Assembly (NCBI GenBank): GCA_033442325.1
Contig: JAWQFM010000023.1
Coordinates: forward strand, 453,775-480,138
DNA: 26,364 nucleotides
From: Salpingoeca rosetta
Taxonomy: Eukaryota; Protista; Choanoflagellata
Direction of reading: 5' to 3'
The notes under the pieces were generated by a model. The model searched no databases. It saw nothing but the letters and a program-made list of their open reading frames with translations, and was not told the origin of the DNA. A program made the translations under genes and the position numbers. This document shows, in pieces, positions 5,414 through 25,667 of this stretch. Numbering within the stretch: position 1 is the first letter of the stretch; the number at the start of each line of letters is the position of its first letter.

Positions 5414-5415
<2 letters not shown>

Positions 5416-5476: not shown

Positions 5477-5479
<3 letters not shown>

Positions 5480-5739
5480 TGATTGCTCCCTTCACTTGTG
5501 TACTACAGTACTACTTCTGCTGCTGCTGCTGTAACGTAACAAATGCAACGCACGCGCACATACCCGCGCACATGCAACACCCACGCACATGCGCGCACAC
5601 ACATGCACCACATGCACACACACGAAAGCAACAACGGAAGCAACCTGCAACATCCTTCAGCAAAGACACAGCGACGCTGTGCTGCTTGCTAATCACGGCT
5701 TTGCATGCAGCATGCACGTGCACACGTATTTCTTTGCCC

Positions 5740-6141
5740 TCAGTAGTTCTTTGGCGCGGCCACGAAGGACCAGCTCTGCGCATCGCTGTCCTCGTCACAG
5801 GGCAGGATTTGCACGTCGTCCTGCTTGCCGCGGGTGAGGCAGTGTGTTGGCTGCAGCTTTGGCGAGAAGCGCTTCTCCTTGTGGATCCACATGTAGTCGT
5901 CCTGGTCTGGGGTGCACGCGCCCTGCCGCACGGCTAGCGAGAGCCCGATGTACGCGTCCGCCATGGTGGCGCTTGCCAAGTGGCCCTCTGCCAAGAAGGT
6001 GTGCGTGCACACGGCTCTGTGAGTGAATGTGTGCAAGCATGCATGTCACAGCCAAACGCAGGCAAGCCCGCACACGCGACCGCAGCCCACGTCATTGTAC
6101 ACAACCCTAAATACAGCCCACACCACACACACACACACACA

Positions 6142-6185
<44 letters not shown>

Positions 6186-7099
6186 ACACCACACCACACC
6201 ACACCACACCACACTACACCAAACCACACGCACACGCACACACACACCACACCACGCACACGCACACGCACACGCAAACACACACTTTCCGCTCTCACCC
6301 GTGTCGAGGACCCATTGCTGGGTGAATCCGCCGTGGCAGCCGTACAGGCCAGGCACGCCGCGCTGCTGCTGCATGTTGTCCAAGCACGTGCCCGATTTCC
6401 CCGTCGACATGACAAACACCTCCGTGCCAGGTGGCACGCCTGCTGCCGCAATACGGCGCGGTGCGTGCTCGGCGGGCTTGAACTCCCACACCTGCGCCTG
6501 CAGGGCTGCAGTCTGCACAGTGCTGGCGCTGTCGCTGGACTGTGCCGCGCACGGCTGGAGGTGCAGGCGGTTGTCTGGTGTGCGCGCAAGGCAGGAGGAA
6601 GGGTCCGCCTTGTTATGGAGGCGGCTGCCGCGCCTTTCAAACGTGAGCGCATCGCTGCGGCCCACAAGCGCAATGGTGTCGACGCGCAGGCACAGCAGCG
6701 TGACGCGCGGGTAGTGGTTGAGGTAGATGTACCCACGCGGAGAAACCACCCACTGCTGCTGGTCGTTGTGCGGCGCGCACGACTGCAGCGTGACGGGGCC
6801 GTCGTCCTTCACGCCGTTGTTGGACAGGCACTGCGCCTCGTCCTTGGACGCAATCTGGCCCGGCGTTGCGTCAATGTCCGGCACAAACACGTCGTAGGCG
6901 ACGTTGTCGAGATACCACTTGAAGGAGCGGCACTGGTTTGCCTCGCGCACCTGCCGCCGCGATGACACGTCCCCAAACTCCTTTCCATGCAGGTGGCGGA
7001 AGTCGTAGAAGATCTTCTTGTACTCGTCCATCCACACCTTTTTTGTTTGTTGGCGCGTGTGGGTGTGTGCGCGCATGTGGGCGTGTGTGTGTATGTGGG

Positions 7100-7133
<34 letters not shown>

Positions 7134-7227
7134 CGTGTGTGTGTGTGTTTGTACGTGCTCTGCATTTTTGGAGACGACGCTATGGAAACTAACCCATTCA
7201 TCCCAACCATCCACCACTCATCACAAA

Positions 7228-7277
<50 letters not shown>

Positions 7278-8955
7278 ATACACACCTCTGCGACGCGAAT
7301 GTCGTTCCGGTCGAGGTAGTAGCCGACGTTGACGGACTTGAGCTTTGGGTCCACGCTAAAGCGGTTAAACTCGCGATAGATGTGCCCGACATTGGAGCAA
7401 GGAATCCACTCCATCGACCCGCCGCACTGCCACACGCGAAAGGACAGCTCCACGTGCTCGGCGCCGTAGTACTTGATCTCGGGATCGTACGCGCCCAGCT
7501 GAAAGAACAAGTCCTTGTCAATCGCAAACAGCCCTGCACGTTGTGCGTATGTGCGTATGTGCGTATGTGTGTGTGTGTGTGTGGTGGAAATTGAGCCCAT
7601 GTTACAGTATTACGTGACTCCACAATGAGGACGTGATCCACCGAGAAAAGGTGACATGCATTACTGCAGCCGACCATGACCGACCCCGACGACGCATGGC
7701 CTCGCCCGCCCCCTCACCCCACCCATCCCTCGCTCCCCGGCACACCCACAGCACGCACAACGTCATGTAGCAAACCCCCGCACTAACCTCCTGGCATGAC
7801 GGGGCTTCTGATGGGGCGCGTGTGTGGGTGACCATCGCCAACAAGATCGCGGTCGATGTTTGCGGGCACAATGGTGAAGGTGAGGCGCCAGTTGAAGCTG
7901 CCCTTGGCGGGCGGCCACAGCTCGCCGGGGAAGAGGTCCAGCTTGTCCAGGTCGATGCCGCGGATGTTGGGCACGACCACGCGCGTGCGGTCTTCGTGGA
8001 TGCGGGCAACCAGGGGCTCGATCCACCCGGGCGACACCTCACTGTGGCTATCGAGGAAGACGAGGATCGGGTGGGACGCCTCCTGCGCCCCGCGCACGCG
8101 CGCCCCGACAATCCCGTCGTGCACGTGCCGGTGGAAGAGCTTGATCATGCCGTCCGGGACCTTGAGCTTCTTCAGGTGCTTTGGGAGCAGCTGCAGCTCT
8201 GGCAGCGTGCTGTTGTCGTCGATGAGCAGAATCTCGCCAAGCAGCTCGGGCGGGGTGCGGTTGAGCACGCTCACGACGTTGCGCAGCAGCGTGGACAAGG
8301 GCTCGTTGTAATAAATGATGATGACGCTGGACTTGGGCATGCCCCTGGGGTACGTGATGGCCTTGCACTCGTCTGACCGGATATCAGGCACATCGTGGGC
8401 GAGCGGCAGCTCGTTGGACTTTTTCAGGTTGAACCCATACTGCCTGTACATGGACTCGCGCGAGTTGAGGATGGGGTCGTCGCGGATGTTCTTTGGCAGG
8501 TCCAGCTCAAGATGCACCGGCTGCCACCAGGCACCGCCACCAGCAGCAGCAGCAACTGCGCGTTGTTGTTGCTGCCCTTGCTGCTGCTGCTGTTGTTGTT
8601 GCTGCTCTTCTTGCTTTCGTTTGAGCTGCGCCTCGGCTTCTGCCTGCCATTGCCGTTCTTGCAGCTGCCGCTCCTTCTCCGCGTTCTCCGCCTCCAGCTT
8701 TTGCTGCTGCGCAAGCATGTCCTGCTTTGCTTGCATTCGACGCAGATCCTCCAGCACAGGCGCATCGTCCCCTTGTCCCCTTGGCACCACACCATTGCCA
8801 CCACTGCCACCATCGCCAGTGCCAGTGCCAGTGCTAGTGCTGCTGCCGCTGCCGCTGCTGCTGCTGTTGTTGTTGTTGTTCAGCGTGCGCAGCCCAAGCA
8901 GCACCACCACCACCACAGCAAGCAACACCAGCTCCCGCTTCCGCGCACCTCGCAT
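5740..8955 (-). CDS. Polypeptide N-acetylgalactosaminyltransferase (GT27/GALNT family), type II membrane protein, ~800 aa. Exons 8955-7788, 7533-7286, 7037-6299, 5987-5740
   Basis: N-terminal signal anchor MRGARKRELVLLAVVVVVLLGL, Q-rich stem, GT-A motifs SVIIIYYNE, EILLIDDNS, FLDSH, SPVMPG|GLFAID, ELSFRVWQCGG, VAE|VWMDEYK and CRSFKWYLDNV, then ricin-B (CL..C..QxW) repeats. Splice phases 1,0,1 give 2403 nt = 801 codons. Confidence 0.93.
6121..6285. repeat. Compound (CA)n/(CACAC)n/(CACACG)n microsatellite in GalNAc-transferase intron 3
   Basis: Directly visible; UG-rich on the transcribed strand next to the donor at 6298. Confidence 0.9.
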
Positions 8956-9059
8956 ATCTTGGGTTCCTATATCAGGGCCGATGGCCGGGATTTGTACTGA
9001 AAATAGGCAATTCACACCAAGTGGCTGATATCTTCCACCACCTTTCCTCTGGTTTGACC

Positions 9060-9073
9060 GTTCGCTTGGCAAC
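9060..9073. promoter_or_regulatory. RFX X-box in the divergent promoter between the GalNAc-transferase and the dynein gene
   Basis: GTTCGCTTGGCAAC (reverse complement GTTGCCAAGCGAAC) matches the 14-bp X-box GTTGCCATGGCAAC with one perfect half-site. It lies ~390 nt upstream of a ciliary gene ATG and just before a CA-rich 5'UTR-like tract. Confidence 0.7.
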
Positions 9074-9466
9074 CAATCTTCCTCAACAACACATACAACC
9101 ACTACATCCGTGCACCGCCACAACACCACAACACCAACCAACAACATTTTCAACTGAACAACCCACCACCACCACCATCACCGCGACGATATTGATTGAC
9201 GTGTTGTGATTCTCTCTGACCAGGTGGGGGCTCCAGAACAAGCAAGGAGGGGTCCGAGCACACACACGCACACACACGCACGCACACGCACACACACGCA
9301 CACACACGCACGCACCCACGCACGCGCAACGCGCAGCGATCGAGGCTGGGTGAAGAACGGTCAAGGGTATTCCTTCATTCATTCACTCAATTCATCGTCG
9401 CGACACCCTGCAAGCAAGCAGCACACACCAACACCAGCAGATAGTTGGCCCAGCCACAAAAAAAAA

Positions 9467-12400
9467 ATGGCTGATACAGAACAACAACCCGCAACAGAGC
9501 AGCCGCCTCCAAAGCCCGTGGAGGCGGAGGAGCAGGAGCAGCAAGCCGACGCACAGCCTGCACAGGAGGCGACTACCGCTTCTACCGAAGATGCGCCTGC
9601 AAACGCAGAGACGGCAAACGAGGAGCAGGACGTGAAGGAGAATGAGAATGGTGACGCGGCAACAGAGGAGGCCAAGACAGAGGAGAAGGAGGACGGTGAG
9701 GCGACTGAGGACAAGAAGGAGGATGGCGGCAGTGAAACTACCGAGGAGGCCAAGACCGACGCAGACGCTGAAGCTGAGGCCGAAGCTGCTGAGGAGGCCA
9801 AGACAGACGCAGACGCAGACGCAGACGCCGACGCAGACGCTGAGGCTGAGGCCGAAGCTGCTGAGGAGGCCAAGACAGACGCAGACGCTGCCAACGCCGA
9901 CGCAGACGCAGAGGCAGACGCAGACGCTGCCAACGCCGACGCAGACGCTGAGGCAGACGCCGCCACCACTGAGGAGGCCAAGACAGACGCAGACGCTGAG
10001 CCGGACGCCGAAGCTGCTGAAGCAGAACAGGAGGAGTCCAAGACTGAGGGTGAGAGCACGGATGAGAAGCCAGCAGCCGATGCAGCCGAGGCATCCACAG
10101 AGGCTACCCCACAAGAGGAACAGTCTGCAGAAGCCAAGACAGAGGAGCCTGCTCCGGCTCCTGAGGCTGAACCTGAGCCTGAGCCCGAGACAGAGGCAGA
10201 GGTGATTGCGAGGGAACAGGCAGCCGTCGCTGTCAAGCGGAGGGAAATCCGCTCCCTTCCTCGTCCTCCAGAGGGCGGTCAGTCCATTGTGTGTGTGTGT
10301 GTGTGTGCGTATCTGCTGTATGTGTGTGTGTGTGTTGTAAGTGTTTTGCACCTGTCAACGTGTGGTCCTGCTTTGCCCCCCCCGTCCCTTCGCTGTTCAC
10401 CCTTCCGTTTGAGCATTCATATCCACCCCATCAGCCCACTCCACGTAAAACCCTAGCCCAATATTCACACTCGTAACATTTTCCCTGTCTTCTCCACACC
10501 TCCCCCCCCCTTGCTGCCCTGCTGCTCATTCTGTTCCTCTCCCCACCAACATCAGAGCGAAAGCACAACCCGCGCACGCGCAAGGCTGCCGCGCCCGTGA
10601 GCAAGTTCACGCGACGGGCACACAAGGTGGCTAAGCCGCAGGAGCGCATGAAGAGCAAGGTGGCCAACAAGGACAGCACCATGGAGGCGTCACACAAGAG
10701 CAAGGAGGCGCGCGCCGCCAAGGCCGCCAGCATGGACGCCCGCCACAAGTACATCATCTCCTGCGTCGCCGACCTCGTGCAGGAGGAGGCCGAGACAGTG
10801 GAGACGCAGGTGCTCGACGGCCCCGGGTTTGAGCAGTTTGACCAGTTCTTCGCCGCCAACCCGACGCGCCGCCAGCTCGTCTTCTTCTACCAGAACTTCC
10901 CCAACCGCAAGGGCGAGATGGAGAAGCGCGTGCAGATTGTCAACCCGGCCGTGGACCGGCTCACGGGCACGTGCGTCTACTGCGTGCGCGGCGCCTCCAC
11001 CCGCGCCCTCAGCACCAGCAACGTCGCGCAGGAGGTGACCTTTGGCCGGTTTGGCCTGGACAGGGCATCCGGCACCGTGCTTGGCGGCATGGAGTCGATC
11101 ATCGCCGACTTCCTCGAGCCCGCGCTCATGGCCAACGAGAACTGGGGCAAGATGGAGAAGGACGATGCGCAGCGTGAGGAGTTCTTCGACGCCCTGGAGC
11201 GGTTCCGCGCCACGCTGAGCGAGGCCAACGTTGCCGTGGCCACGCGCGTCGTGCTGCAGGCGTACGAGCCCAAGGAGGGCGAGCCCGCGCTGGAGCTGGA
11301 CAGCATGTCCGCCGCAGACGTCACGCGCATGTCGCAGGACCACAAGGCGACGGCGCAGCTGGAGGAGCTGGTGCAGCACTGGTGCACGCAGCTGGAGCAG
11401 GTGATTGCGGAGAGCGAGCAGATGCGCAAGGAGGCGGACGACGTCGGCCCCCGCGCCGAGCTGGAGCACTGGAAGCAGCAGATGGCCAAGTTCAACGGCG
11501 TGCTGGACCAGATGAAGGAGGCGCGCTGCCAGAACGCCGTCAACGTGCTGCACCTCGCCAAGTCGCGCCTCATCCCGGAGTGGCGCCGCCTCGAGGTGCG
11601 CATCACAGAGTCCGCAAACGAGGCCAAGGACAACGTCAAGTACCTGTCCACCCTCGACAAGTTCTGCGGGCCCCTGTACAAGAACAGCCCGCCGCAGATG
11701 ATGGAGTCGGTGCCCGCGCTCATGAACGCCGTGCGCATGATCCACTCCATCTCCGGCTACTACAACACGAGCGAGCGCATGACCGCGCTGTGCGTGAAGA
11801 TCACCAACCAGATGATCACCGCCTGCAAGCGCTACATCTACGAGAAGGAGCCCCGCATCTGGGACCAGGATCCCAAGGACCTCACCGCTCGCCTCAGCCA
11901 CGTACGGCCAGCCGTGCATGCTCTTTTGATGATTTGCGCATGTGGTAGCTTTGCATGTGTTGTATGTGTATCTGCACCCATACTTGTACGTCTGTGTCTG
12001 TGTCTGTGTGTGTCCGCGTGTCCAGAACTGTGCATGTACACACAGGAGCTCGCTGTTCCTTGCCACCACAGCATCGCGACGCTTCCCTCCAACCACCAAC
12101 CCACCCCAACAACAAACCCCCCGCCCCAACAACAACAACAACACCCCCCCCCCCACTCACACTAACACACACACACACACCACGCTCACGCACTGATAAC
12201 CGCCCCCCCCCCACACACACACAGTGCCGAGAGCTGAACCAGCACTACCAGCGGTGCTTTAAGCGGGAGAAGGAGAAGCTGCTGGCCACCCCAGAACGGC
12301 GGCAGTTTGATTTTTCGGAGATGTCCATCTTTGGCAAGTTTGACACGTTCTGCGCCCGCACGGAGAAGATTGTGCAGATGCTGGACATTATCGAGCGCTG

Positions 12401-15400
12401 GAGCAAGCTGAGCGCAAGCAAGATTGACGGCATCGAGCCCATCAACGTGCTCTTCCGCTCCCTCGTCAACAACTTCAAGAAGAAGCCGTACGACGTGCTC
12501 AACACGCGCCGCCGCGACTTTGACACAGACTTTGAGCAGTTCCAGAGCGACATCCAGGACCTGCTGCAGCGGCTGCAGGACTTTATGGACGACTGCTTTG
12601 CCCAGGCGCCGAGCGTCATGCGCGCCCTGGACCTCCTCACCAAGTTTGAGAAGATCAAGCACGTCGGCCTCGACCTCTCGGAGAAGTACGAGCTGGTGCT
12701 GCGCGCCTTTGGCAAGGAGCTCGAGGAGGTGCGCAAGGTGTACCAGGCGGAGAAGCAGGACCCCTCCATTGGCCGCAACCTGCCGCCGCTCGCCGGACGC
12801 ATCATCTGGGCGCGCCAGCTCTTCGCCCGCATCGAGGGCCCCATGTCCGTGTTCCAAAAGTCGTGCACCGACCTCCTTAAGACCGCCGACGCGCGCAAGG
12901 TGATTAAGCACTACAACAAGCTCGGGCACGTGCTGCTCGAGTACGAGCTGCTGCACCACCGCGCATGGTGGAAGGCGGTGGACGCCTCGCAGTCCGGCCT
13001 CAACGCCTCGCTCCTCGTGCGCCACCCGGAGACGGGCAAGCTCCTGGTCAACATGGACCCGCAGCTGCCGCAGGTCATCCGCGAGACGAAGATCATGCAG
13101 AAGCTCAACCTGGAGATCCCGGAGAGCGCCAAGCTGCTGTGCCTGCAGGAGGAGCGCCTGGCCAACCAGAAGAACCAGCTCGAGCTGATGATTGAGGAGT
13201 ACAACCGCGTGTTTTCCCGCATCCCGGAGCGCGTTGAGCACCTCCTGCGCTCCGCGCGCAAGGCCGTCGACAAGCAGGTGGAGCCCGGCGTGACGAAGCT
13301 GAGCTGGATGTCGCCCAACCTCGACCCGTACCTGCAGACGTGCTACGGCGCCCTGGCAGACTTTGAGAAGCTGCTCAAGGAGGTGGAGGATACGCTGCAG
13401 GTGCGCATCGACTCCGTGCTGGAGAACATCCGCAAGACGATGCTCGTCAAGCTACCGGAGGAGATGGCCTGGCCCTGCACGCAGTTTGTGGAGGAGACGG
13501 AGGCCCTCTGCGCCACGCGCACGGAGGAGCTGCAGCTGTCAAACAAGCTGGTGGAGCGGGCGGTGGACGAGCTCGTGGCCATGCTGCTCAAGAGCATGCT
13601 GCCGGAGGACCGCCAGTCCGAGCACACCCGCTCCGAGGTGGACAGCCTGCTCAGCCACTTCAACCACAGCGTCGTGGACGCCTTTGTGCGCTGCGTGCGC
13701 CGCAACCTAGAGGCCATCAAGAAGCGCCTCTCCCGCGCCCGCAAGGAGTACGACGAGAACACGGCAAAGTCGCCGCCGTGCTTCTCCGCCTCCATTGTGC
13801 TCGACATCCCAAACATCAGCATGACCCCGGCGCTGGACGACATCCAGAAGGCCGTCAACCAGGCCGTGCAGACGGTGATTGGCGTCACCCGCTCCATCAC
13901 CACGTGGAAGTCGCACCCCCTCGCCCGCGCTGCCCGCAACCACCACGGCAACGCGCAGCAGCAGCAGCAGCGGCAGCAGCGGCAGCAACAGCAGCAGGAA
14001 GGGGGAGACGCAGGTCAGGATGGCGCAGCGGAGGACGAGGAAGAGGACGATGAGGTGCGCAGCCGCGAGCGCGCGGCCCTCAGCGCCGTCGCCGAGGGCA
14101 ACATCTACCACATTGTGTCCGAGAACAAGGAGGTGGCGAAGAACGTGTCGTCGCTCTCGTCGGCCATCAACTCCACAAAGCAGGAGGTGACAGACGTGCT
14201 AGAGCGCCTCAGCAAATACAACCGCCTCTGGCAGGACAGCAAGGAGGACAAGACGGAGGAGTTCTTGGCAACGGAGCCCGACCTGTACGACTTTGAGGTT
14301 GCGGTGAAGGGGTACGAGGAGATTGAGAACGAGATCCTGGCGTTGCCGGAGACGTACCGCGTGAGCGCGATTGAGCTGGCCACGGACACGTTCAAGCAGG
14401 CCATGACGGCGGAGACGCGCGCGTGGAAGCAGGCGTACGGCCGTGGCCTTAACACCAAGGCGCTCAAGGACATGAACAGCATCTTTGAGTTCTGCGAGGA
14501 CCTGACCAAGCGGCTCTCGCGCAAGATTGTGGACCTGGAGGACGTGCGCATGGCGATGAACGCGCTCAAGGAGCTGCGCGAGGAGCAGATTCGCCTGGAC
14601 AACATGCTGGGCCCCATTGAGCAGTCGTACGCCATCCTCAGCAAGTACGACGTCGTGGTCCCGCGCACGGAGACGGAGCGCCTGGACACGCTCAACTACG
14701 AGTGGGACAAGCTGCTCGGCCTCTCCAAGCAGGTGCAGAACAACCTGATTGAGATTGCGCCCTCCTTCCGCGAGGGCCTCGAGTCGAGCGTGCAGAAGTT
14801 CACCCTGGAGGTGTCGTCCTTTGTCAACGACTATGACAGCAAAGGCCCCAACGAGGAAGGCATTGTGCCCGCGGAGGCCAGCGACCGGCTGGCCGTGTTC
14901 CAGGTGCGCTTCGATGACCTGTGGCGCCGCTACATCACGTACACGGGCGGCGAGGAGCTGTTTGGCCTGCCGCAGTCCGAGTACCCGGACCTGCCCCGCA
15001 TCAAGAAGGAGCTCGGCCTACTGCAGAAGCTGTACGGCCTCTACAACGACGTGCTCAAGACGATTGACGGCTACTACGACATTCAGTGGACGGCGGTCGA
15101 CATTGAGAAGATCAACTCGGAGCTGCTTGACTTTGGCAACCGCTGCCGCAAGCTGCCCAAGGCGCTCAAGGAGTGGCAGGCTTTCCACGAGCTGCGCAAG
15201 CGCATCGACGACTTCAACGAGACTTGCCCCTTGCTCGAGGCCATGTCCAACCCGGCCATGCTGCCGCGCCACTGGCAGCGCATCGCCGAGGCCACTGGCC
15301 ACACGTTTGACATTGAGTCTGAGAACTTCCTCCTGCGCAACATCATGGAGGCCGACCTGCTCAAGGCCAAGGAGGAGATTGAGGACATTTGCATTGCGGC

Positions 15401-18400
15401 GGTGAAGGAGCAGGACATTGAGGCCAAGCTGAAGAGCGTGGTGGCGGAGTGGTCTGCGCACGAGCTGTCGTTTATGACGTTCAAGAACCGCGGCGAGCTG
15501 CTGATCAACGCCGCCGAGATTGCCGAGCTCATGACGCTCATGGAGGACAGCCTGATGGTGCTGAGCTCCCTCATGAGCAACCGCTACAACGCGCCGTACA
15601 AGGCCGACATCCAGAAGTGGGTGCGCAACCTCTCCGACACCTCTGAGATTGTGGAGAAGTGGCTCATCGTGCAGAACCTGTGGGTGTACCTGGAGGCCGT
15701 ATTTGTGGGCGGCGACATTGCCAAGCAGCTGCCCAAGGAGGCGAAGCGCTTCTCCAACATTGACAAGTCGTGGCAGAAGATTATGACCCGCGCGCACGAG
15801 AACACCAACCTGGTGCAGTGCTGCACCGGCGACGAGACCATGAGCAACCTCCTGCCGCACTTGCACGAGCAGCTGGAGCTGTGCCAGAAGTCGCTGGTGG
15901 GCTACCTGGAGAAGAAGCGCCTGCTGTTCCCGCGCTTCTTCTTCGTGTCGGACACGGTGCTGCTGGAGATTCTCGGCCAGGCCAGCGACTCGCACACCAT
16001 CCAGGGCCATCTCCTCAACATCTTCGACAACATCAAGCAGGTCACCTTCCACGAGAAGGTGTACGACCAGATCCTGGCGTACTCGTCCAAGGAGGGCGAG
16101 ACAGTGCACATGCAGCGGCCCGTGATGGCGACGGGCAACGTCGAAACGTGGCTGGGCCAGTTCCTGGAGGAGCAGCGGCGCTCCCTCAACAGCGTCATCT
16201 GCGACGCCGCCGTGCAGGCGCTGGACCAGAACTTCCAGCTGATTGAGTTTGAGAACAGCTACCCGGCACAGGTTGGCATCCTCGGCATCCAGCTGCTGTG
16301 GACGCGCGATGCGGAGGTGGCGCTCAACAACGCCCGCCAGGACAAGAAGATCATGCAGCAGACCGACGACAAGTTCCTGCGCCTGCTCAGCGAGCTCATC
16401 AACGCAACGCTGCAGGAGCTGACAAAGGTTGACAGGACCAAGTTCGAGACGCTCGTCACCTTGCACGTGCATCAGCGCGATATCTTCCACGACCTCGTCG
16501 TCATGGGCATCAAGACGCCAATTGACTTTGAGTGGACCAAGCAGGCCCGCTTCTACTTCTTGGAGGAGGAGCGCAGAACAGCCGTCCACATCACCGATGT
16601 CATCTTCAACTACTCGCTCGAGTTTATCGGCTGCGTGGACCGCCTGGTCGTCACGCCGCTCACGGATCGCTGCTACATCACCCTTGCCCAGGCCCTCAAC
16701 CTGCACATGGGTGGCGCCCCTGCTGGTCCCGCCGGTACGGGCAAGACAGAGACCACCAAGGACATGAGCCGCTGCATCGGCAGGTGTGTGTGTATGTGTG
16801 TATGTGCAAGTGTGCGTGTGCGTGTGCGTGTGCGTGTGCGTGCGTATGTTTGGTTGGGAGCTTGTGAGGGGGGTGTGTGTGTGTGTGTGTGTGTGTGAAT
16901 GATCATCGTTTTGCTGGTATGGCACGTTGAAGAAGGGCGCTCGCTGATGGCCGTAAATCTCTCCCTCTCACCTCCCAATTCTCACTCGTTCGTTTGTACT
17001 CACACCACCCACAACCACACATGCGAATGTGATTGATGTGACAGGCTTTGCGTCGTTTTCAAGTACGGCCCTGTGGCGTCTTGTTTGGGTTCTTTTTTTG
17101 GGGGCGGGGGCGGGGAGCGGTCCTTTGCTTGATTTGGAGTGAACCACTCATGTGCTGCTGTGTTTTGCTGTTGTGTCATGCGCATGTCCGTGCCATTCAT
17201 CACTTGACCAACTCACCTCTGCTCGTTTTTCGTTACTTTGCGCCATGTATCGTCACATCACTTTGCACACGCGATTCACCCAACCCACCACAGCGTAAGT
17301 CATATGAATGTTGTCTGCATGCCGTGCACCGTCTGTAACGTGTTGTGGGTCAATTTTCATTGCATACTCGACTGGCTGCCGTGTGTCTGTTGTCATACCT
17401 CATCTCTTCTTGACACACCCACATTGACGCTTTGCTCACCATCACACCTTTCAACATGCAACCAACGCTTTGATCTTGCCACTGGCCCCCTTCCTTCTTT
17501 CTTTCATCGCCCGTCCCCATCTCTGCCCTCCTCCTCGATAGTGTAAGTTAGCCACATTGCGCACTTGTGCGTGCGCGTGTGCATGCTTGTGTGCGTGCGC
17601 GTGTGCATGATTGTGTGCACACACACATGCACACTCTGATTGCGGGGCTAGAAGCGCGTTTCTGCTAGTGTGTCAACAACGCCTTGCTTTCGTTGCCCTG
17701 ACGCCGTTTTTCTGCTTTCCTTTGTTTCCACAACACAACTGCACCATTGCCCTCCACCTCTACCACCACTACCACCACGACCAGGCTCTGATCAAATGGA
17801 CTTCCGTGGCCTGGGCCGCATCTACAAAGGCCTGGCGCAGTCTGGCGCGTGGGGCTGCTTTGACGAGTTCAACCGCATCGAGCTGCCCGTGCTCTCTGTT
17901 GCGGCGCAGCAGATTGCCATTGTGCTCACGGCCAAGAAGGAGCGCCGCAAGAACTTCATTTTCATGGACGGCGACGACGTGTCGCTCAACCCGGAGTTTG
18001 GCCTCTTCCTGACCATGAACCCCGGGTACGCCGGGCGCCAGGAGCTGCCGGAGAACCTCAAGATCCAGTTCCGCTCCGTGGCCATGATGGTGCCTGACCG
18101 CCAGATTATCATCCGCGTGAAGCTTGCCAGCTGCGGTTTCCAGAACAACGTCGTCCTGGCGCGCAAGTTCTTCACCCTGTACAAGCTGTGCGAGCAGCAG
18201 CTGTCCAAGCAGGTGCACTACGACTTTGGCCTGCGCAACATCCTGTCTGTCCTGCGCACGCTCGGCCCGGAGAAGCGCAAGAACCCGGACGATGGCGAGA
18301 CGACCATTGTCATGCGCGTGCTGCGAGACATGAACCTGTCCAAGCTCGTGGACGAGGACGAGCCGCTCTTCATGTCGCTCATCACCGACTTGTTCCCCGG

Positions 18401-21400
18401 CATCGAGCTGGAGACGGTAACGTACCCGGACATGCAGGACGCCATTCAGAAGCACGCAGACGAGGCCAACCTCGTCAACCACCCGGCCTGGAACCTCAAG
18501 CTCGTGCAGCTGTTTGAGACGCAGCGCGTGCGCCACGGCTTCATGGTGCTCGGCCCGAGCGGCGCCGGCAAGACCACCAACATCCACACGCTGATGAAGG
18601 CCATGACGGAGTGCGGCACGCCGCACAAGGAGTACCGCATGAACCCCAAGGCCATCACGGCGCCGCAGATGTTCGGGCGCCTGGACGTGGCCACCAACGA
18701 CTGGACCGACGGCATCTTCAACGTGCTCTGGCGCCGCACCCTCAAGGGCAAGAAGGGCGAGAAGACGTGGATTGTGCTGGACGGCCCCGTTGACGCCGTG
18801 TGGATTGAGAACCTCAACAGTGTGCTGGACGACAACAAGATGCTCACGCTGGCCAACGGCGACCGCATCCCCATGTCCCCGGACGCCAAGCTCGTGTTTG
18901 AGCCGCACAACATCGACAACGCGTCGCCGGCCACCGTCTCGCGCAACGGCATGGTCTTCATGTCGTCCTCCGTGCTGGACTGGCGGCCCATCCTCGAGGG
19001 CTGGTTCAAGCGCCGCTCCGCCAGCGAGAGCGACGTGCTCCGCGGCATGTTCGACCTCTGCTTCGACGACACCCTCACGTACGTGCGCACGAGCCTCAAC
19101 CCGCGCATGACGCTGCTGGAGTGCAACTACATCAAGCAGGCCATCGACCTGCTGACGGGCCTCATCCCCAACGGCGAGCAGGAGGGCTCCGACGGCCACG
19201 GCGCAGAGCCGCTCTCCGCCGAGCACCTGCGGCGCCTGTTCATCTTCGCCATCATGTGGTCCCTCGGTGCGGTGCTGGAGCTGGACGACCGCGCGCGCCT
19301 GCAGGAGTTCCTGCACTCCCTGTCCGGGGACCTCCCGCTGCCAAAGACAACGGGCGAGGAGACCATCTTCGAGTACATGGTCAACGAGCAGGGCGAGTGG
19401 GAGCACTGGAGCAAGCGCGTGGAGCCGTACGACTACCCGCGCGACCCGAACGAGCCCACGCCGGCGTTCCGCAGCATCCTCGTGCCCAACATCGACAACG
19501 TGCGCAGCGAGTTCCTGCTGCACACCATTGCCAAGCAGCACAAGTCTGTGCTGTTTATTGGCGAGCCCGGTACGGCGAAGACGGTCATCACCAAGGGCTA
19601 CTGCAAGAAATTCAACCCCGAGGAGCACCTGTGGAAGTCGCTCAACTTCTCGTCCACGACGCACCCCAACGGCTTCCAGCGCACCATTGAGTCGTACGTG
19701 GAGAAGCGCATGGGCACCACCTTTGGGCCGCCCGGTGGCAAGGCCATGGCCGTGTTCATCGACGATATCAACATGCCCATCATCAACGAGTGGGGCGACC
19801 AGATTGCCAACGAGATTGTGCGCCAGGTCATGGCCGAGAGCGGCTTCTACTCGCTGGACAAGCCCGGCGACTTCATCACGCTGGCGGACATGCAGTACCT
19901 CGCCGCCATGCCGCACCCCGGTGGCGGCCGCAACGACATTCCGGAGCGCCTCAAGCGCCGCTTCTCCGTGTTCAACTGCACGCTCCCGGCCAACGTGTCC
20001 ATCGACCTCATCTTCCGCACCATCGGCAACGGCTGGTTCTGCCCCGAGCGCGGCTTCACCCCGGACGTGGTGCAGATGGCGGACCAGCTGGTGTACCTCA
20101 CGCGCAAGATGTGGCAGGACACCAAGGCCAAGATGCTGCCCACGCCGGCCAAGTTCCACTACGTGTTCAACCTGCGCGACGTGAGCCGCATCTGGGAGGG
20201 CATGCTGCTCATCCAGCCGGAGGAGTGCGACTCCGTGCAGGCCCTGCTCAACCTGTGGAAGCACGAGTGCACGCGCGTCCTCGCCGACCGCTTCACGGAG
20301 AAGAAGGACGTGGCGTGGTTCCAGCAGCGCATCCAGCAGGTGATTGCCTCTGAGCTCGGCGACGAGTACGCCAACCTCACCGACGAAGAGCCGTTCTTCG
20401 TCGACTTCCTGCGCGAGGCGCCCGAGCCGACGGGCGAGGAGGGCGAGGAGGAGGCCGACCTGGAGGCGCCCAAGGTCTACGAGAAGGTCCCCGACCTGGA
20501 CACGCTTGAGGCCAAGCTCAAGGAGTACATGCAGCTGTACAACGAGACGGTCCGCGGCGCCAAGATGGACCTCGTCTTCTTCCGCGACTGCATGATCCAC
20601 CTGGTGCGCGTGTCGCGCATCATCCGCATCCCGCAGGGCAACGCCATGCTGGTCGGCGTCGGCGGCTCCGGCAAGCAGTCTGTCACGCGCCTGGCCACCT
20701 CCATTGCCGGGTACAAGGTGTTCCAGATCCAGCTCAGCCGCTCGTACAATGCCAACAACCTGATGGAGGACATCAAGCAGCTGTACCAGATTGCGGGCGT
20801 CAAGGGCCAGGGCCTCACCTTCATCATGACCGACAACGAGATCAAGCAGGAGGGCTTCCTCGAGTACATCAACAACCTGCTGGCCACGGGCGAGATTGGC
20901 GGCCTGTTTGCCCGCGACGAGATTGACGAGATTTGCGGCGAGCTCATCCCCGTGATGAAGAAGGAGTTCCCGCGCCGCCCGCCCACAAACGAGAACCTGT
21001 ATGACTACTTTATCAACCGCGTGCGCAACAACCTGCACGTTGTACTGTGCTTCTCCCCCGTGAGCGAGAAGTTCCGCACGCGTGCCCTCAAGTTCCCCTC
21101 GGTGTTTGCGGGCACGAACATGGACTGGTTCATGGCGTGGCCGCGCGACGCGCTAGTGGCCGTGGCCGACCACTTCCTCAGCGACTTCCACGTCGTGTGC
21201 ACGAACGACGTCAAGGGCGCCATGGTGGAGACGATGGGTGTGGTGCAGGACCGCGTCGGTGCCGCGTGCGACGACTACTTCCAGCGCTTCCGCCGTCAGA
21301 CGTACGTGACCCCGGCGTCGTACCTCTCCTTCCTCAACTCGTACAGGCACCTGTACTCGGACAAGAAGGAGCACTTTGAGAACCTGCGCCAGCGCATGCA

Positions 21401-24400
21401 GACGGGCCTGGACAAGCTGCTCGAGGCGTCCGAGTCTGTGGCGCAGCTGAGCGAGGAGCTCGTGGTGAAGGAGAAGGACCTGGCCGTGGCCTCGGAGGAG
21501 ACGGAGCGCGTGCTGCAGGAGGTGTCGCAGAGCGCCGCCGCCGCAGAGAAGGTCAAGTCCGAGGTGCAAAAGGTCAAGGACAAGGCGCAGGAGATTGTGG
21601 ACACCATCGACAAGGACAAGAAGGTGGCTGAGAAGAAGCTGGCCGCGGCCGTGCCTGCGCTGGCCGCGGCCGAGAGGGCGCTGGAGACGATCAAGCCCGC
21701 CGACATTGCCACGGTGAAGAAGCTGGGCAAGCCGCCGCACCTCATCATGCGCATCATGGACGCCGTGGTGATTCTGTTTGGGCGCAAGCTGGACCCCGTG
21801 GTGCCGGACCCGGAGCGGCCCTGCCCGACGCCCTCGTGGAAGGAGTCCCTCAAGACCATGAACGGCCCACTGCTAAGCGAGCTGGTCAACTTTGACAAGG
21901 ACACCATCAACGACGAGATGGTGGAGCTGCTTGAGCCGTACCTGGGCATGGAGGACTACAACATCGACCAGGCCAAGCGCGTGTGCGGCAACGTGGCTGG
22001 CCTGCTCTCGTGGACGGAGGCCATGGCCACCTTCTTCGGCATCAACAAGGAGGTGCTGCCGCTCAAGGCCAACCTGGCCGTTGCCGAGGCGAAGCTCAAG
22101 GTGGCGCAGGGCGAGTTGGCGGAGGCGCAGGGCGAGCTGGACGCCAAGCAGGCCGAGCTGGACGTGGTGCAGGCGCGCTACGACGCCGTGATGAAGAAGA
22201 AGCAGGAGCTGCAGGCGGACGCGGAGACGTGCCGGCGCAAGATGGCCTCTGCCTCTGCCCTCATCGGCGGCCTCAGCGGGGAGAAGGTGCGTTGGACGCA
22301 GCAGGCCAAGGAGTTTGAGGCGCAGATCAACCGGCTCGTCGGCGACGTGCTGCTCATGTGCGCCTTCATGTCGTACTCTGGGCCCTTCAACAACGAGTTC
22401 CGCACGCTGCTGCTCAGCGGGTGGCGCAAGGAGCTGGAAACGCGCACCATCCCCTTCACCAAGTCCCTCAACATTGTGGAGAACCTGGTGGACAACGCGA
22501 CCATTGGCGAGTGGGGCCTGCAAGGGCTTCCCAACGACGAGCTGTCGCTGCAGAACGGCATCATCGTCACCAAGGCCACGCGCTATCCGCTGCTGATTGA
22601 CCCGCAGGGCCAGGGCAAGGCGTGGATCAAGAACCGCGAGGCGAAGAACGAGATGCTGGTCACCACGCTGGACCACAAGTACTTCCGCACGCACCTGGAG
22701 GACGCCCTGTCGCAGGGCCGCCCGCTGCTGATTGAGGACGTGGTGGAGGAGTTGGACCCGTGCCTGGACAACGTCCTGGACAAGAACTTTATGAAGGCCG
22801 GTTCCACGTACAAGGTCAAGGTTGGCGACAAGGAGGTTGACATTATGGACGGCTTCATGCTGTACATCACCACCAAGCTGCCCAACCCGACGTACACGCC
22901 CGAGGTGTTTGCGCGCACGTCCATCATCGACTTCACCGTGACCATGAAGGGCCTGGAGGACCAGCTCCTGGCCAAGGTGATTCTCACGGAGAAGGCCGAG
23001 TTGGAGACGGAGCGCGTTGCGCTGGTGACGGAGGTCACGGCCAACAAGAAGAAGATGAAGGAGCTCGAGGACAACCTGCTGTACCGCCTGAGCAACACCA
23101 AGGGCTCGCTGGTCGACGACGAGAGCCTGATTGAGGTGCTGCAGGTGACGAAGACGACGGCAGAGGAAGTGAACGAGAAGCTGGCGGTGGCCGCAGACAC
23201 GGAGCTGAAGATCAACACCGCCCGTGAGGAGTACCGGCCCGTGGCCACGCGCGGGTCCATTCTGTACTTCCTCATTGTGGAGATGTCCATGGTCAACCCC
23301 ATGTACCAGACGTCGCTGGACCAGTTTTTGGGCATCTTCGACTTCAGCCTGGCGCACTCTGAGAAGTCGCCCGTGCCCATGAAGCGCATTGCCAAGATTA
23401 TCGAGTACATGACCTTTGTGGTGTTCAAGTACACGAGCCGCGGCCTGTACGAGAAGGACAAGTTCCTCTTCACCATCCTCCTCGCCCTCAAGATTGACCT
23501 GCAGCGCGGCAACGTGAAGCCAAACGAGTTTATGACGTTCATCAAGGGTGGTGCCGCGCTGGACCTCAACTCCGTGCAGCCCAAGCCCAAGTCGTGGATC
23601 CTCGACTCGACGTGGCTCAACCTGGTGCAGCTGAGCGAGCTGCCCATGTTCGCCGACATTCTCAACCAGGTGTCGCGCAATGACAAGGCTTGGCGCGCGT
23701 GGTTTGACGAGGACGTGCCCGAGGAGGCGCCGCTGCCGGACGGCTACGAGAGCACGCTCGACGTGTTCCGCCGGCTGCTGCTGGTGCGCTCGTGGTGCCC
23801 GGACCGCACGCTGGCGCAGGCGCGCAAGTACGTGGCCTCGTCACTTGGCCAGCGCTATGCCGACGCCGTGCTGCTTGACATGGAGGAGATGTACGGGGAG
23901 AGCGACGTGCGCACACCGCTGGTTGGCCTGCTGTCCATGGGCGCGGACCCGACGGGCGCCATCCAGCACCTGGCCAAGCTCAAGAAGGTGGAGTGTCGCG
24001 AGGTGTCCATGGGCCAGGGTCAGGAGGTGCACGCGCGCAAGCTCATCTCGGACTTCCAGCAGAACGGCGGGTTTGCGCTGCTGCAAAACTGCCACCTTGC
24101 CCTCGACTTTATGAACGAGGTCCTCGACACGGTGAAGACGGCGGAGAACGTCAACCCGGCGTTCCGACTGTGGGTGACCACGGAGGTGCACCCCAAGTTC
24201 CCCATCAATCTGCTGCAGTCGTCGATCAAGTTCACCAACGAGCCGCCGCAGGGCATCAAGGCCAACCTCAAGCGCACGTACGCGGACGTGACCCAGGACC
24301 AGCTGGACATCACCAACCTGCCCCAGTGGAAGCCCATGCTGTACGGCGTGGCATTCCTGCACGCCATTGTGCAGGAGCGGCGCAAGTTTGGCCCCCTTGG

Positions 24401-25667
24401 CTGGAACATCCCCTACGAGTTCAACCAGGGTGACCTGCTTGCCTCGTTCCAGTTTGTGCAGAACCACCTGGACGACATTGACCCGAAGAAGGGCGTGGCG
24501 TGGCCCACGGTGCGCTACATGCTGTCGGAGGTGCACTATGGCGGGCGCGTGACGGACGACCGCGACAAGCGCCTTCTCATCACATACTGCACGCTGTGGT
24601 TTGGCGAACACATGTTCAAGGACGACTTTGCCTTCTACAAAGGCTACGAGATTCCCAAGTGCGCCAAGATTGACGAGTTCCGCGACCACATCAGCCATCT
24701 CAACACTTTTGACGGGCCCGAGGTCTTTGGGCTGCATCCAAACGCGGACATCACGTACATGACCAACACGGCGCAGAACGTGCTGGCCACAATTGTTGAC
24801 ATCCAGCCCAAGGAGAGCGCTGCCTCCGGTGGCGAGACGCGCGAGGACGCCGTCAAGCGCCTGTGCAAGGAGTTCCAGCAGAAGCTGCCAGACGACTTTT
24901 TGCCGCACGAGGTCAAGGCGCGCCTGCGCAAAATGGGTGCCACCAACCCCATGAACATCTTCCTGCGGCAGGAGATTGACCGCATCCAGCGCGTCATCAC
25001 CCTCGTCCGCACCACCCTGTCCGACCTGCTGCTGGCCATTGACGGCACCATCATCATGAGCGAGACGCTGCGCGACGCCCTCGACAACATGTACGACGCG
25101 CGCGTGCCCAAGGCCTGGTCGGCCATCTCCTGGACGTCCATGACGCTGGGTTTCTGGTTTACGGAGCTGATTCTGCGCCACCAGCAGTTCCACAGCTGGT
25201 GCTTCCAGGGCCGCCCCGCGGCCTACTGGCTCACGGGCTTCTTCAACCCGCAGGGCTTTATCACGGCCATGCGACAGGAGATCACCCGCGCGCACAAGGG
25301 CTGGGCGCTGGACAGCGTTGTGTGCTGCAACGACATTACCAAGATGGCCGGCAAGGAGGATGTCAAGGAGCCGCCCAAGGAGGGCGTGTACATCTACGGC
25401 CTCTTCCTCGATGGCGCTGGCTGGGACAAGCGCAACAGCCAGCTCACAGACCCGCCACCCAAGGTGCTCTACACCCCGCTGCCTGTGCTGCACCTCTCCG
25501 CCATCAATTCCACCGCCGATCGTGACAAGCGCCTGTACGAGTGCCCCGTGTACCGCAAACCGCGCCGTACCGACCTCGAGTTTGTCACCATGGTTGACCT
25601 CAAGACCCCAGTGCCCCCAGAAAAGTGGATTCTGCGCGGTGTCGCCTTGCTTTGTGACACCAAGTGA
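9467..25667 (+). CDS. DNAH5: Axonemal outer-arm dynein heavy chain (DNAH5/DNAH8 type, gamma-HC class), ~4872 aa. Exons 9467-10277, 10556-11901, 12225-16783, 17045-17062, 17294, 17542, 17785-25667
   Basis: P1 GPAGTGKT (16725-16748), Walker [12 protein letters not shown]2 GPSGAGKT (18552), P3 GEPGTAKT (19560; DNAH5/8-like), P4 GVGGSGKQ (20655), stalk/MTBD coiled coil, tail motif ELEHWK, C-terminus [13 protein letters not shown]. Exon sum 14619 nt = 4873 codons. Attachment of exon 1 rests on phase compatibility (G|AG). The symbol denotes the DNAH5/8 clade, not a resolved one-to-one ortholog. Confidence 0.95.
9660..10150 (+). repeat. Coding minisatellite: EEAKT(DA)n(EA)n repeats in dynein exon 1
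   Basis: gaggaggccaagac recurs at about 9665, 9743, 9791, 9863 and 9971, with degenerate copies at ~10030 and ~10130, separated by (gacgca)n and (gaggct)n runs. Confidence 0.85.
17045..17062 (+). CDS. 18-nt microexon of the dynein heavy chain, encoding (R)LCVVF(N)
   Basis: acag|G CTT TGC GTC GTT TTC AA|gtacgg; it completes AG|G = Arg from exon 3 and supplies the conserved xxVVF strand after the AAA1 P-loop. Confidence 0.93.
17294..17294 (+). CDS. Single-nucleotide exon (C) completing the Asn codon AA|C of the dynein FNC motif
   Basis: ccacag|C|gtaagt: CAG at 17291-17293, perfect GTAAGT donor at 17295-17300; needed for frame and motif. Confidence 0.85.
17542..17542 (+). CDS. Single-nucleotide exon (T) starting the Cys codon T|GC of the dynein FNC motif
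   Basis: Pyrimidine tract ~17486-17536, then gatag|T|gtaagt: TAG at 17539-17541, GTAAGT at 17543-17548. The next exon starts cag|GC TCT GAT CAA ATG at 17785. Confidence 0.83.

What the first reader, a model, noticed from the sequence alone, without database searches (positions are those of the whole stretch)
16784..17784. Two consecutive single-nucleotide exons (plus an 18-nt microexon) build the conserved FNC motif of dynein AAA1
Seen in sequence: exon 3 ends ...KDMSRCIG+AG at 16783 and the last exon begins GC TCT GAT CAA ATG GAC ([12 protein letters not shown]) at 17785; joined directly they are out of frame. Established knowledge: axonemal dynein heavy chains read G-K/R-x-x-VVFNCSDQMD here, so 20 nt are missing. 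Inside the gap are acag|GCTTTGCGTCGTTTTCAA|gtacgg (17045-17062), cacag|C|gtaagt (17294) and gatag|T|gtaagt (17542). Spliced in order they give AGG CTT TGC GTC GTT TTC AA-C T-GC TCT GAT = RLCVVFNCSD, the exact length, frame and residues expected. The four introns are 261, 231, 247 and 242 nt, like the other introns in the window. Isolated 1-nt exons are known (e.g. Arabidopsis APC11), but I know of no description of two in tandem in an essential motor gene. Automatic gene models would almost certainly mis-predict this region.
Basis: partly seen in the sequence, partly recalled or inferred. Interest (0 to 1): 0.97.

Follow-up and report, generated by a model that had tools for sequence, protein, structure and literature searches.

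The report
Two one-base exons in dynein gene
RNA-seq confirms that an outer-arm dynein gene of a choanoflagellate builds the Asn-Cys codons of its ATP-site FNCSD motif from an 18-base exon and two consecutive one-base exons, and three other dynein genes in the same genome carry the same signals (no RNA laid on them), which is the smallest and densest exon arrangement I could find described.

Summary

**RNA.**
- Stranded raw RNA-seq (two runs) and contigs from two further studies join 17062 to 17785 with exactly the letters CT between.
- All 23 junction reads carry CT.
- A 145-nt contig has exactly 25 letters between 16778 and 17785, which is 5 + 18 + 2.
- Three reads show a splicing intermediate: retained intron 2, then C17294, then T, then the last exon. 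This ties the C to 17294.

**Source of the T.** T17542 is assigned by inference. It has a perfect donor, and every paralog has an equivalent AG|T|GTRAGT.

**Genome.** The DNA is present in at least 18 DNA runs from about 7 studies, so this is not an assembly error.

**New here.**
- Three other dynein paralogs (a DNAH7-like gene and two more inner-arm type) have the same TTCAA|…AG|C|GT…AG|T|GT…AG|GC layout.
- A DNAH2-like gene has one 1-nt exon (T). A DNAH10-like gene has only the last of these introns.
- Orthologues lack these introns in Monosiga, Trichoplax, Oscarella, a fish, a sea cucumber and three metagenomic relatives. The module is therefore lineage-specific and recurs across ancient paralogs.

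Other first-stage notes in this genome flagged the paralog cases (s1-435882, s1-435308). Single 1-nt exons are published; I found no tandem case.

The parts
10546..11901 (+). Exon 2 of the dynein heavy chain gene (N-terminal tail); the 5' boundary is approximate
   Evidence: tblastn of homologue P0004, residues 35-483; the donor GTACGG follows at 11902
11902..12224 (+). Ordinary intron (323 nt, GTACGG...CAG)
12225..16783 (+). Giant exon 3 (about 1,520 codons). It ends with Walker [20 protein letters not shown] plus AG, the first two bases of an Arg codon
   Evidence: DHC_N1, DHC_N2, AAA_6 profile positions 1-57
16784..17044 (+). Intron 1 (261 nt, GTGTGT...ACAG), nearly empty of RNA reads
   Evidence: (depth 0-0.6)
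17045..17062 (+). 18-nt microexon GCTTTGCGTCGTTTTCAA, giving (R)LCVVF plus AA of the Asn codon
   Evidence: read depth island in bin 17037-17103; joint from 17062; 25 letters between the two flanks in contigs of X5 and X6
17063..17293 (+). Intron 2 (231 nt, GTACGG...ACAG); the most often retained of the four
   Evidence: depth 1-5 against 30-50 in exons; intermediate reads retain it
17294..17294 (+). 1-nt exon C (third base of the Asn codon AAC), in the context cacag|C|gtaagt
   Evidence: CT in all 23 junction reads; 3 reads run from intron 2 through C17294, then T, then 17785.
17295..17541 (+). Intron 3 (247 nt, GTAAGT...ATAG)
   Evidence: (depth about 0-0.9)
17542..17542 (+). 1-nt exon T (first base of the Cys codon TGC), in the context gatag|T|gtaagt. 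The assignment is inferred
   Evidence: one search shows a T between C17294 and 17785. The position is inferred from the perfect donor and from an equivalent AG|T|GTRAGT in all five paralogs that need it. The only other candidate is 17669
17543..17784 (+). Intron 4 (242 nt, GTAAGT...CCAG)
17785..25667 (+). Giant last exon. It starts with GC (completing the Cys codon) followed by [11 protein letters not shown]..., runs for about 2,626 codons to the stop, and encodes the whole motor from AAA1 to the C-terminal domain

Best explanation
The gene is the DNAH5-type (outer-arm, gamma-class) axonemal dynein heavy chain of a choanoflagellate, most likely Salpingoeca rosetta. Between two giant exons, 20 coding bases are split by four ordinary U2-type GT-AG introns of 231-261 nt into an 18-nt exon, a 1-nt exon (C17294) and a second 1-nt exon (T17542). 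All three are spliced in constitutively and yield ...GRLCVVF-N-C-SDQMDF.

Inferred mechanism:
- Splicing works by intron definition. Each short intron is recognised as a unit from its own donor, branch site and nearest downstream AG, so no exon has to be recognised.
- The acceptor AG of one intron lies at positions -3/-2 of the next donor, so neighbouring introns cannot be committed at the same time and must be removed one after another.
- The order is not fixed. Introns 3 and 4 can be removed while intron 2 is still present.
- The 1-nt exons contribute nothing to U1 pairing, so they depend on near-perfect intronic donors (GTAAGT) matching the canonical U1 5' end.

The same C/T module is present in three other axonemal dynein genes of this genome, and in reduced form in two more. 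It is absent from orthologues in other species. It is therefore a lineage-specific module that either spread between paralogs or arose repeatedly at one site.
For: Shown:
- Sequence and signals.
- The mRNA carries CT between 17062 and 17785 in 23 of 23 junction reads of two stranded RNA runs and in contigs of two other studies. The contig spacing is exactly 25 letters. An intermediate joins intron 2 + C17294 + T + last exon. Intron 2 shows the most retention.
- The genomic stretch 17100-17700 is fully held by at least 18 DNA runs of about 7 studies.
- Skipping any of the small exons gives a frameshift or a stop.
- Gene identity: Pfam architecture and 82-84% identity to vertebrate DNAH5 over the first 400 residues of the last exon. 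All 116 homologues with a P-loop read xxVVFNCSD or the equivalent at this place.
- Paralogs L004, L007 and L012 have TTCAA|GT...AG|C|GT...AG|T|GTAAGT...AG|GC. L010 has AAC|GT...AG|T|GTGAGT...AG|GC. All five spliced products are in frame and canonical.
- The U1 snRNA gene starts ATACTTACCTG.
- Donors after 1-nt exons are GTAAGT in 6 of 9 cases, against 2 of 10 neighbouring donors (one-sided p = 0.055).
- A genome-wide scan for the tandem signature found only the dynein loci plus one hit that looks like chance.
- The FNC motif is contiguous in orthologues.
Against: - The T is not tied to 17542 by any read. AG|T|GTGTCA at 17669 is a formal alternative, since GTGTGT is used as a donor by intron 1.
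- Splicing of the paralogs is inferred from sequence only.
- Intron definition, the mutual exclusion of neighbouring spliceosomes and the role of donor strength are inferences. The donor enrichment is only suggestive (p about 0.055-0.07, n = 19).
Confidence: 0.93

Rival explanations
1. The C comes from 17294, but the T comes from AG|T|GTGTCA at 17669. The last two introns would then be 374 and 115 nt, and 17542 would be an unused look-alike.
For: 17669 is the only other AG|T|GT in the gap. Intron 1 shows that a GTGTGT donor is used in this gene. No read distinguishes the two T positions.
Against: - 17542 has a perfect GTAAGT donor behind a long pyrimidine tract. It is one of only two YAGNGTAAGT sites in 26 kb.
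- All five paralogs that need a T have AG|T|GTRAGT 208-394 nt upstream of the last exon.
- A 115-nt intron would be much shorter than every intron seen in these clusters (185-401 nt).
Confidence: 0.04
2. The module is removed by an obligatory 5'-to-3' recursive (ratchet) pathway that adds one base per step, as in recursive splicing of long Drosophila introns.
For: The AG|N|GTAAGT geometry resembles ratchet points. After each upstream ligation a new exon|GTAAGT donor is regenerated.
Against: - In one search, three reads (2 starts, at least 37 nt on each side) show introns 3 and 4 already removed while intron 2 is still present.
- Intron 2 has the highest residual coverage, so the upstream intron is often the last to go.
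- The introns are short (231-261 nt), not the tens of kilobases for which recursive splicing is known.
- One base is kept at each site, so these are exons rather than zero-length ratchet points.
Confidence: 0.07
3. The CT is not genome-templated at these sites. It would come from insertional RNA editing, or from an assembly or strain error in which CT is really contiguous with a neighbouring exon.
For: Dinucleotide insertion editing exists in some organelles (from memory: Physarum mitochondria). Short-read aligners reported the CT only as 'letters between'.
Against: - Intermediate reads run from intron 2 sequence straight through C17294.
- Both bases sit in perfect, statistically unexpected splice-site contexts. 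Those contexts are repeated in four more genes whose introns are otherwise unrelated.
- The genomic stretch is held completely by at least 18 DNA runs of about 7 studies.
- No AG|CT|GT 2-nt exon exists in the gap.
Confidence: 0.01

Closest known systems
1-nt exons of plant APC11 and VPS55 (PMC4674806; PMC8831610)
   Same: A single nucleotide is flanked by canonical AG and GT, is constitutively included, is needed for the reading frame and is missed by aligners and annotation. The donor after the 1-nt exon is strongly conserved as GTRAGT (VPS55), as it is here.
   Different: The plant exons are isolated. Here two lie in tandem, separated by one 247-nt intron and preceded by an 18-nt exon, so four introns fall within 20 coding bases. 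The module recurs in at least 4 paralogous genes. The organism is a choanoflagellate, not a plant.
1-nt exon of Fusarium CYP621A P450 genes (PMC12940212)
   Same: A 1-nt exon inside a highly conserved catalytic-fold motif (PKG), confirmed by SRA reads and conserved across orthologues. The authors call it the second example known.
   Different: It is a single exon within one orthologous group. Here the case is tandem and is shared by ancient paralogs but not by orthologues in other species.
Recursive splice sites / ratchet points of long Drosophila and vertebrate introns (from memory: Burnette 2005; Duff 2015; Sibley 2015)
   Same: An acceptor is immediately followed by a strong GTAAGT donor, and a donor is regenerated after the upstream ligation.
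   Different: Ratchet points keep zero bases and serve stepwise removal of very long introns in 5'-to-3' order. Here one base is kept per site, the introns are about 240 nt, and an intermediate shows the downstream introns removed first.
Placozoan mitochondrial cox1 single-base exon (PMC5436844)
   Same: A 1-bp exon proven by deep RNA sequencing.
   Different: It is organellar and flanked by self-splicing-type introns with trans-splicing, not by nuclear spliceosomal GT-AG introns.
DNAH5/DNAH8 outer-arm axonemal dynein heavy chain
   Same: Full domain architecture. 82-84% identity to vertebrate DNAH5 at the start of the motor. Walker A and [14 protein letters not shown] motifs are present.
   Different: Orthologues read GKYVVVFNCSD, whereas this gene reads GRLCVVFNCSD. 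Fish, sea cucumber and a metagenomic relative encode FNC in one exon.

Membership tests
Spliceosomal single-nucleotide exon | The base is present in mature mRNA but is not contiguous with either neighbouring exon in the genome | tested here: met
   CT lies between 17062 and 17785 in 23 of 23 junction reads and in contigs of two other studies. Genomic neighbours are GTACGG and CCAG.
Spliceosomal single-nucleotide exon | Flanked by a canonical acceptor AG and donor GT | tested here: met
   cacag|C|gtaagt and gatag|T|gtaagt.
Spliceosomal single-nucleotide exon | Each base is tied by RNA evidence to a specific genomic position | tested here: inconclusive
   C17294: met, by intermediate reads that retain intron 2. 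T17542: inferred only, from the perfect donor and from conservation in five paralogs. 17669 is not excluded by any read.
Spliceosomal single-nucleotide exon | The genome sequence is real, not an assembly artefact | tested here: met
   100% of the words of 17100-17700 are held in at least 18 DNA runs of about 7 studies.
Spliceosomal single-nucleotide exon | Required for the reading frame and a conserved motif | tested here: met
   skipping gives a stop or a frameshift; the result restores the FNCSD motif and the 8 missing AAA_6 profile positions.
Recursive splice site (ratchet point) | Zero-length exon: AG directly abuts GT | tested here: not met
   One base lies between AG and GT and is kept in the mRNA.
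Recursive splice site (ratchet point) | Obligatory stepwise 5'-to-3' removal of a long intron | tested here: not met
   an intermediate has introns 3 and 4 removed and intron 2 retained. The introns are 231-261 nt.
Outer-arm axonemal dynein heavy chain (DNAH5/8 class) | DHC_N1/N2 tail, AAA1-AAA6 ring, microtubule-binding stalk and C-terminal domain | tested here: met
   Pfam, all above cut-off; colinear with a 4,577-aa homologue.
Outer-arm axonemal dynein heavy chain (DNAH5/8 class) | The closest named relatives are DNAH5/8 rather than other dynein classes | tested here: met
   the best named hits are DNAH5 and DNAH8-like at 82-84% identity. Paralogs in the same genome are at most 57% identical. 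No tree was built.
Insertional RNA editing | The inserted bases have no genomic template | tested here: not met
   Templates with splice signals exist, and an intermediate read runs through C17294.

The most novel reading that the evidence does not exclude
The three-intron, two-1-nt-exon module is a lineage-specific cassette that has been copied to the homologous FNC site of several anciently diverged axonemal dynein genes. These are the DNAH5-, DNAH7- and DNAH2-like genes and two further inner-arm genes. Copying could have occurred by ectopic gene conversion across the highly conserved P-loop and CFDEFNR flanks, or by site-specific reinsertion of introns. If so, a cluster of spliceosomal introns has propagated between paralogs and is retained as the only interruption in up to about 13 kb of coding sequence, possibly because it has a function such as a splicing-dependent expression checkpoint.
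Probability: 0.3. Interest if true: 0.9.

Novelty: new variant of a known kind. Interest (0 to 1): 0.85.

Why it matters
[quoted passage not shown] Two in a row, RNA-verified, with four introns in 20 coding bases, show that a spliceosome can accurately process acceptor and donor signals that physically overlap, twice in succession. This is a clean natural test case for intron definition and for how neighbouring spliceosomes take turns.
- **Experimental access.** The host is probably S. rosetta, a laboratory choanoflagellate. From memory, genome editing is established in it, so marked-base and splice-site edits should be feasible.
- **Intron evolution.** The module recurs in ancient paralogs but not in orthologues. 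That is an unusually sharp case for the question of parallel intron gain against transfer between paralogs.
- **Annotation.** These sites defeat spliced aligners, which reported the CT only as unplaced letters, and probably gene predictors as well. Dynein gene models in this genome and its relatives should be checked.

Tried and rejected
- **Simpler splice solutions.** No AG|CT|GT 2-nt exon and no shifted donor or acceptor can supply CT.
- **Shared intron origin.** BLAST among all 14 cluster introns found only simple-repeat matches of (GT)n, (GTT)n and (CA)n type and no real homology. A recent copy event is therefore excluded, and nothing can be said about an old one.
- **Genome-wide tandem scan (intron 208-269 nt).** It returned L004, L007, this locus and one hit on C31. 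The C31 hit lies in sequence without coding potential. Reversed-pattern controls gave 5 and 1 hits, so I found no sign of the module outside the dynein genes. L012 was missed because its T exon follows AAG rather than YAG, so the scan is not exhaustive. Single 1-nt exons were not scanned because too many chance hits are expected.
- **Ancient (pre-metazoan) origin of the intron positions.** Eight orthologous loci in other species have FNC or NCS contiguous.
- **This genome's own annotated protein models.** They did not appear in three protein searches, so the claim that gene models mis-predict the region is untested.
- **Saccoglossus DNAH8-like locus.** The gene range was too long and no DNA was returned.
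- **'Other letters' at 16650-16727 and 17828-17861.** These are paralog transcripts cross-mapping at 90% likeness. The loose-end consensus sequences match other dynein genes, so this is not editing.
- **Human entries.** Human DNAH5 protein entries appeared in the hit list. They were not looked up, and no human contig was fetched.
Full report
**1. Observation**

The sequence is exactly as described. Exon 3 ends ...ATCGGCAG at 16783 and is followed by GTGTGT. An 18-nt segment at 17045-17062 is bounded by acag| and |gtacgg. C17294 lies in cacag|C|gtaagt and T17542 in gatag|T|gtaagt. The last exon begins at 17785 after accag|. The four introns are 261, 231, 247 and 242 nt.

Joining 17062 directly to 17785 reads VVFKL and then a stop. 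Including C and T gives GRLCVVFNCSDQMDF. The Pfam AAA_6 profile matches positions 1-57 at the end of exon 3 and 66-327 at the start of the last exon, so eight profile positions are missing between them. That is what RLCVVFNC supplies.

**2. Chance**

YAGNGTAAGT occurs only twice on both strands of the 26-kb window, and both matches are these two sites; 0.14 are expected. In 200,000 first-order Markov shuffles of the 722-nt gap, AGCGTRAG appeared in 0.12% and AGTGTRAG in 0.26%. The two never appeared together in the right order. The gap contains no AG|CT|GT that could act as a 2-nt exon.

**3. RNA evidence**

I laid two stranded raw RNA-seq runs of 2026 (X19, X20) and Logan contigs of two older runs from other studies (X5, X6) on window 16300-18300. 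X5 and X6 are not on record as RNA. They held only about 0.64 of the sampled words of window 15800-18800, which fits exon-only content.

- Coverage is on one strand, about 30-50 deep in the exons and near zero in the introns, with an island over the 18-nt exon.
- The joint 17062 to 17785 (GT..AG) is seen in 9 reads (X19) and 14 reads (X20) and in one contig each of X5 and X6.
- Every one of these has exactly the letters CT between the two sides.
- A 145-nt contig present in both X5 and X6 aligns 16733-16778 at contig positions 1-46 and 17785-17858 at positions 72-145. That leaves 25 letters, which equals 5 (16779-16783) + 18 + 2.
- No joint lacking CT reached the listing threshold, so inclusion looks constitutive.
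- Three X20 reads (2 start sites, at least 37 nt on the shorter side) join 17294 to 17785 with a single T between. They run through the 3' end of intron 2 into C17294, then T, then the last exon.

The three-read intermediate is a partly spliced molecule. It ties the C to position 17294. It also shows that introns 3 and 4 can be removed before intron 2. Intron 2 also has the highest residual depth (1-5), against about 0-0.9 for introns 1 and 3.

**4. DNA evidence**

The stretch 17100-17700, which contains both 1-nt exons, is held at 0.98-1.00 of its sampled words by 18 DNA-type runs from six studies. Two further runs of a seventh study hold 0.89-0.94. An assembly error is excluded.

**5. What the gene is**

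The two giant exons carry the complete dynein heavy chain architecture. They are colinear with a 4,577-residue homologue. The best named relatives of the motor's first 400 residues are vertebrate and invertebrate DNAH5 and DNAH8-like proteins at 82-84% identity. The gene is therefore the gamma-class outer-arm heavy chain.

The genome is 55.45 Mb in 68 contigs. The best named relative of a paralog is Monosiga brevicollis. S. rosetta has a 55 Mb genome (PMC4054682). The organism is thus a choanoflagellate, probably S. rosetta. This is an inference.

**6. The same module in paralogs (new)**

The genome has 12 dynein heavy chain loci. I name three intron positions:

- a: after TTCAA (phase 2 of the Asn codon)
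- b: after AAC
- c: after the T of TGC

| Locus | Type | Intron positions in the Walker A-FNC region |
|---|---|---|
| L001 (this gene) | DNAH5-like | a + b + c, plus the extra upstream intron that creates the 18-nt exon |
| L004 | DNAH7-like | a + b + c |
| L007 | inner-arm type | a + b + c |
| L012 | inner-arm type | a + b + c |
| L010 | DNAH2-like | b + c, so a single 1-nt exon T |
| L003 | DNAH10-like (named from memory of the motif) | c only |
| L002 | — | one intron between the Val and Phe codons |
| L009 | — | one intron 12 codons upstream |
| L005 | — | none |
| L006, L008, L011 | cytoplasmic-type | none |

In L004, L007 and L012 the sites read AG|C|GTAAGC, AG|C|GTACGT or AG|C|GTAAGT, then AG|T|GTAAGT. 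All five conceptually spliced products are in frame and read ...VVFNCSDG... or ...IIVNCSDG....

The introns of the different genes share nothing beyond simple repeats. Only the splice signals and the single bases are conserved. This is the main argument that the T of this gene comes from 17542 and not from AG|T|GTGTCA at 17669.

In L001 and L010 the cluster is the only interruption in more than 4,100 codons of open frame.

Two first-stage notes on other windows of this genome (s1-435882, s1-435308) describe what are evidently two of these paralog sites. I found the sites independently before reading the notes.

**7. Orthologues elsewhere lack the module**

| Class | Species or locus | State at FNC/NCS |
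|---|---|---|
| DNAH5 | fish (L014) | contiguous |
| DNAH5 | sea cucumber (L015) | contiguous |
| DNAH5 | activated-sludge metagenome relative (L013) | contiguous; its intron lies 8 nt upstream of a |
| DNAH7 | Trichoplax (L022) | contiguous |
| DNAH7 | Oscarella (L023) | contiguous |
| DNAH7 | metagenome relative (L021, 90% identical protein over 1,845 aligned residues) | contiguous; intron about 32 nt upstream |
| DNAH2 | Monosiga brevicollis (L024; one open frame of about 12.6 kb) | contiguous |
| DNAH2 | Tara Oceans relative (L025) | contiguous |

Fourfold-site identity to the metagenomic relatives is about 0.62, with G+C above 0.9 at third codon positions, so they are not close relatives.

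The module is most simply lineage-specific. Outer-arm, I1 and single-headed inner-arm dyneins are ancient paralogs (established knowledge). Its presence at identical codon positions in five or six of them therefore needs either transfer between paralogs (gene conversion across the conserved flanks) or repeated gain at one site. The nested pattern (c; b+c; a+b+c) fits one origin followed by partial precise losses, or stepwise accretion. I cannot decide between these.

A weak hint for exchange comes from the microexon. It encodes RLCVVF, whereas all DNAH5-type homologues read KYVVVF, and the paralogs of this genome read QCVVF or LLCVV.

**8. How it most likely works**

Shown:
- canonical GT-AG boundaries;
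- constitutive and accurate inclusion;
- a non-obligatory order of removal, with intron 2 slowest;
- a canonical U1 5' end, ATACTTACCTG;
- GTAAGT donors after 6 of 9 one-base exons, against 2 of 10 neighbouring donors (one-sided p = 0.055).

Inferred:
- Introns of about 200-400 nt are recognised by intron definition, pairing each donor with the nearest downstream branch site and AG. A 1-nt exon then never has to be defined.
- The acceptor AG of the upstream intron occupies positions -3/-2 of the next donor. U1 binding and recognition of that acceptor AG therefore compete for the same bases, and flanking introns have to be spliced one after the other.
- The near-perfect intronic donor compensates for the lack of exonic pairing.
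- Any skipping gives a stop or a frameshift right after the P-loop.

**9. Rivals**

- The T comes from 17669. This is about 4% likely; see section 6.
- An obligatory recursive ratchet. The intermediate contradicts it.
- Editing or an assembly error. Excluded.

**10. Known and new**

Single 1-nt spliceosomal exons are published for plant APC11 and VPS55 and for Fusarium CYP621A. The Fusarium paper (February 2026) calls its case the second example known. Searches for tandem or consecutive cases, and for dynein or choanoflagellate microexons, found nothing. The library holds only open-access papers and preprints.

I class this as a new variant of a known kind: tandem 1-nt exons, recurring across paralogs, in a relative of animals.

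**11. Limits**

- Only one read-laying run was available, so paralog splicing and the origin of the T are inferred.
- The organism's own protein records did not appear in the searches, so public gene models could not be checked.
- Human DNAH5 entries in a hit list were not looked up, and no human contig was fetched.

Noticed in passing
G000:C21:1106968-1107788 (L004), C20:945381-946199 (L007), C7:1251661-1252348 (L012), C3:816794-817438 (L010): Three more dynein heavy chain genes have the same two tandem 1-nt exons (C, then T) at the same codon positions. A fourth, DNAH2-like, has a single 1-nt exon T. Their introns are unrelated in sequence.
   Followed up: partly
window 17045-17062: The microexon encodes RLCVVF, whereas every DNAH5-type homologue retrieved reads KYVVVF. 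Paralogs in this genome read QCVVF or LLCVV. This may be a trace of exchange with a paralog.
   Followed up: no
L013:1-200 and L021:1-70: Metagenomic relatives (activated sludge; another ENA assembly) of the DNAH5- and DNAH7-type genes also begin a giant last exon just upstream of FNC, with an intron 8 nt or about 32 nt upstream of position a. Introns close to the P-loop/FNC region in otherwise nearly intron-free dynein genes may be a wider habit of this group.
   Followed up: partly
window 16650-16727 and 17828-17861: The RNA 'other letters' and the many loose ends here come from paralogous dynein transcripts that cross-map in the most conserved segments at 90% likeness. They are not editing or alleles.
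   Followed up: partly
window 16784-16900, 17560-17640, 9240-9330, 12100-12224: The introns start with G/T-rich microsatellites of (GT)n and (GTGC)n type and end C/A-rich. The same strand asymmetry is seen in the paralogs' introns, and (CACACGCA)n-like repeats lie upstream of the gene.
   Followed up: no
G000:C16:1134342-1135199 (L006) and C14:543927-544799 (L008): There are two separate cytoplasmic dynein-1-like heavy chain loci (both GRFVLVFNCDETFD) besides one IFT-dynein-like locus (L011).
   Followed up: no
G000:C11:720361-720524 and C12:1451701-1451864: Two U1 snRNA genes have identical Rfam scores and a canonical 5' end, ATACTTACCTG.
   Followed up: partly
window 3403-9153, minus strand: Long open frames of 640, 427 and 456 aa lie on the opposite strand upstream of the dynein gene. 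They were not examined.
   Followed up: no
G000:C31:552537-552767 (L020): This is the only non-dynein genome hit to the tandem AG-N-GTANG ... AG-N-GTAAGT pattern. It lies in sequence without evident coding potential and is probably chance.
   Followed up: partly
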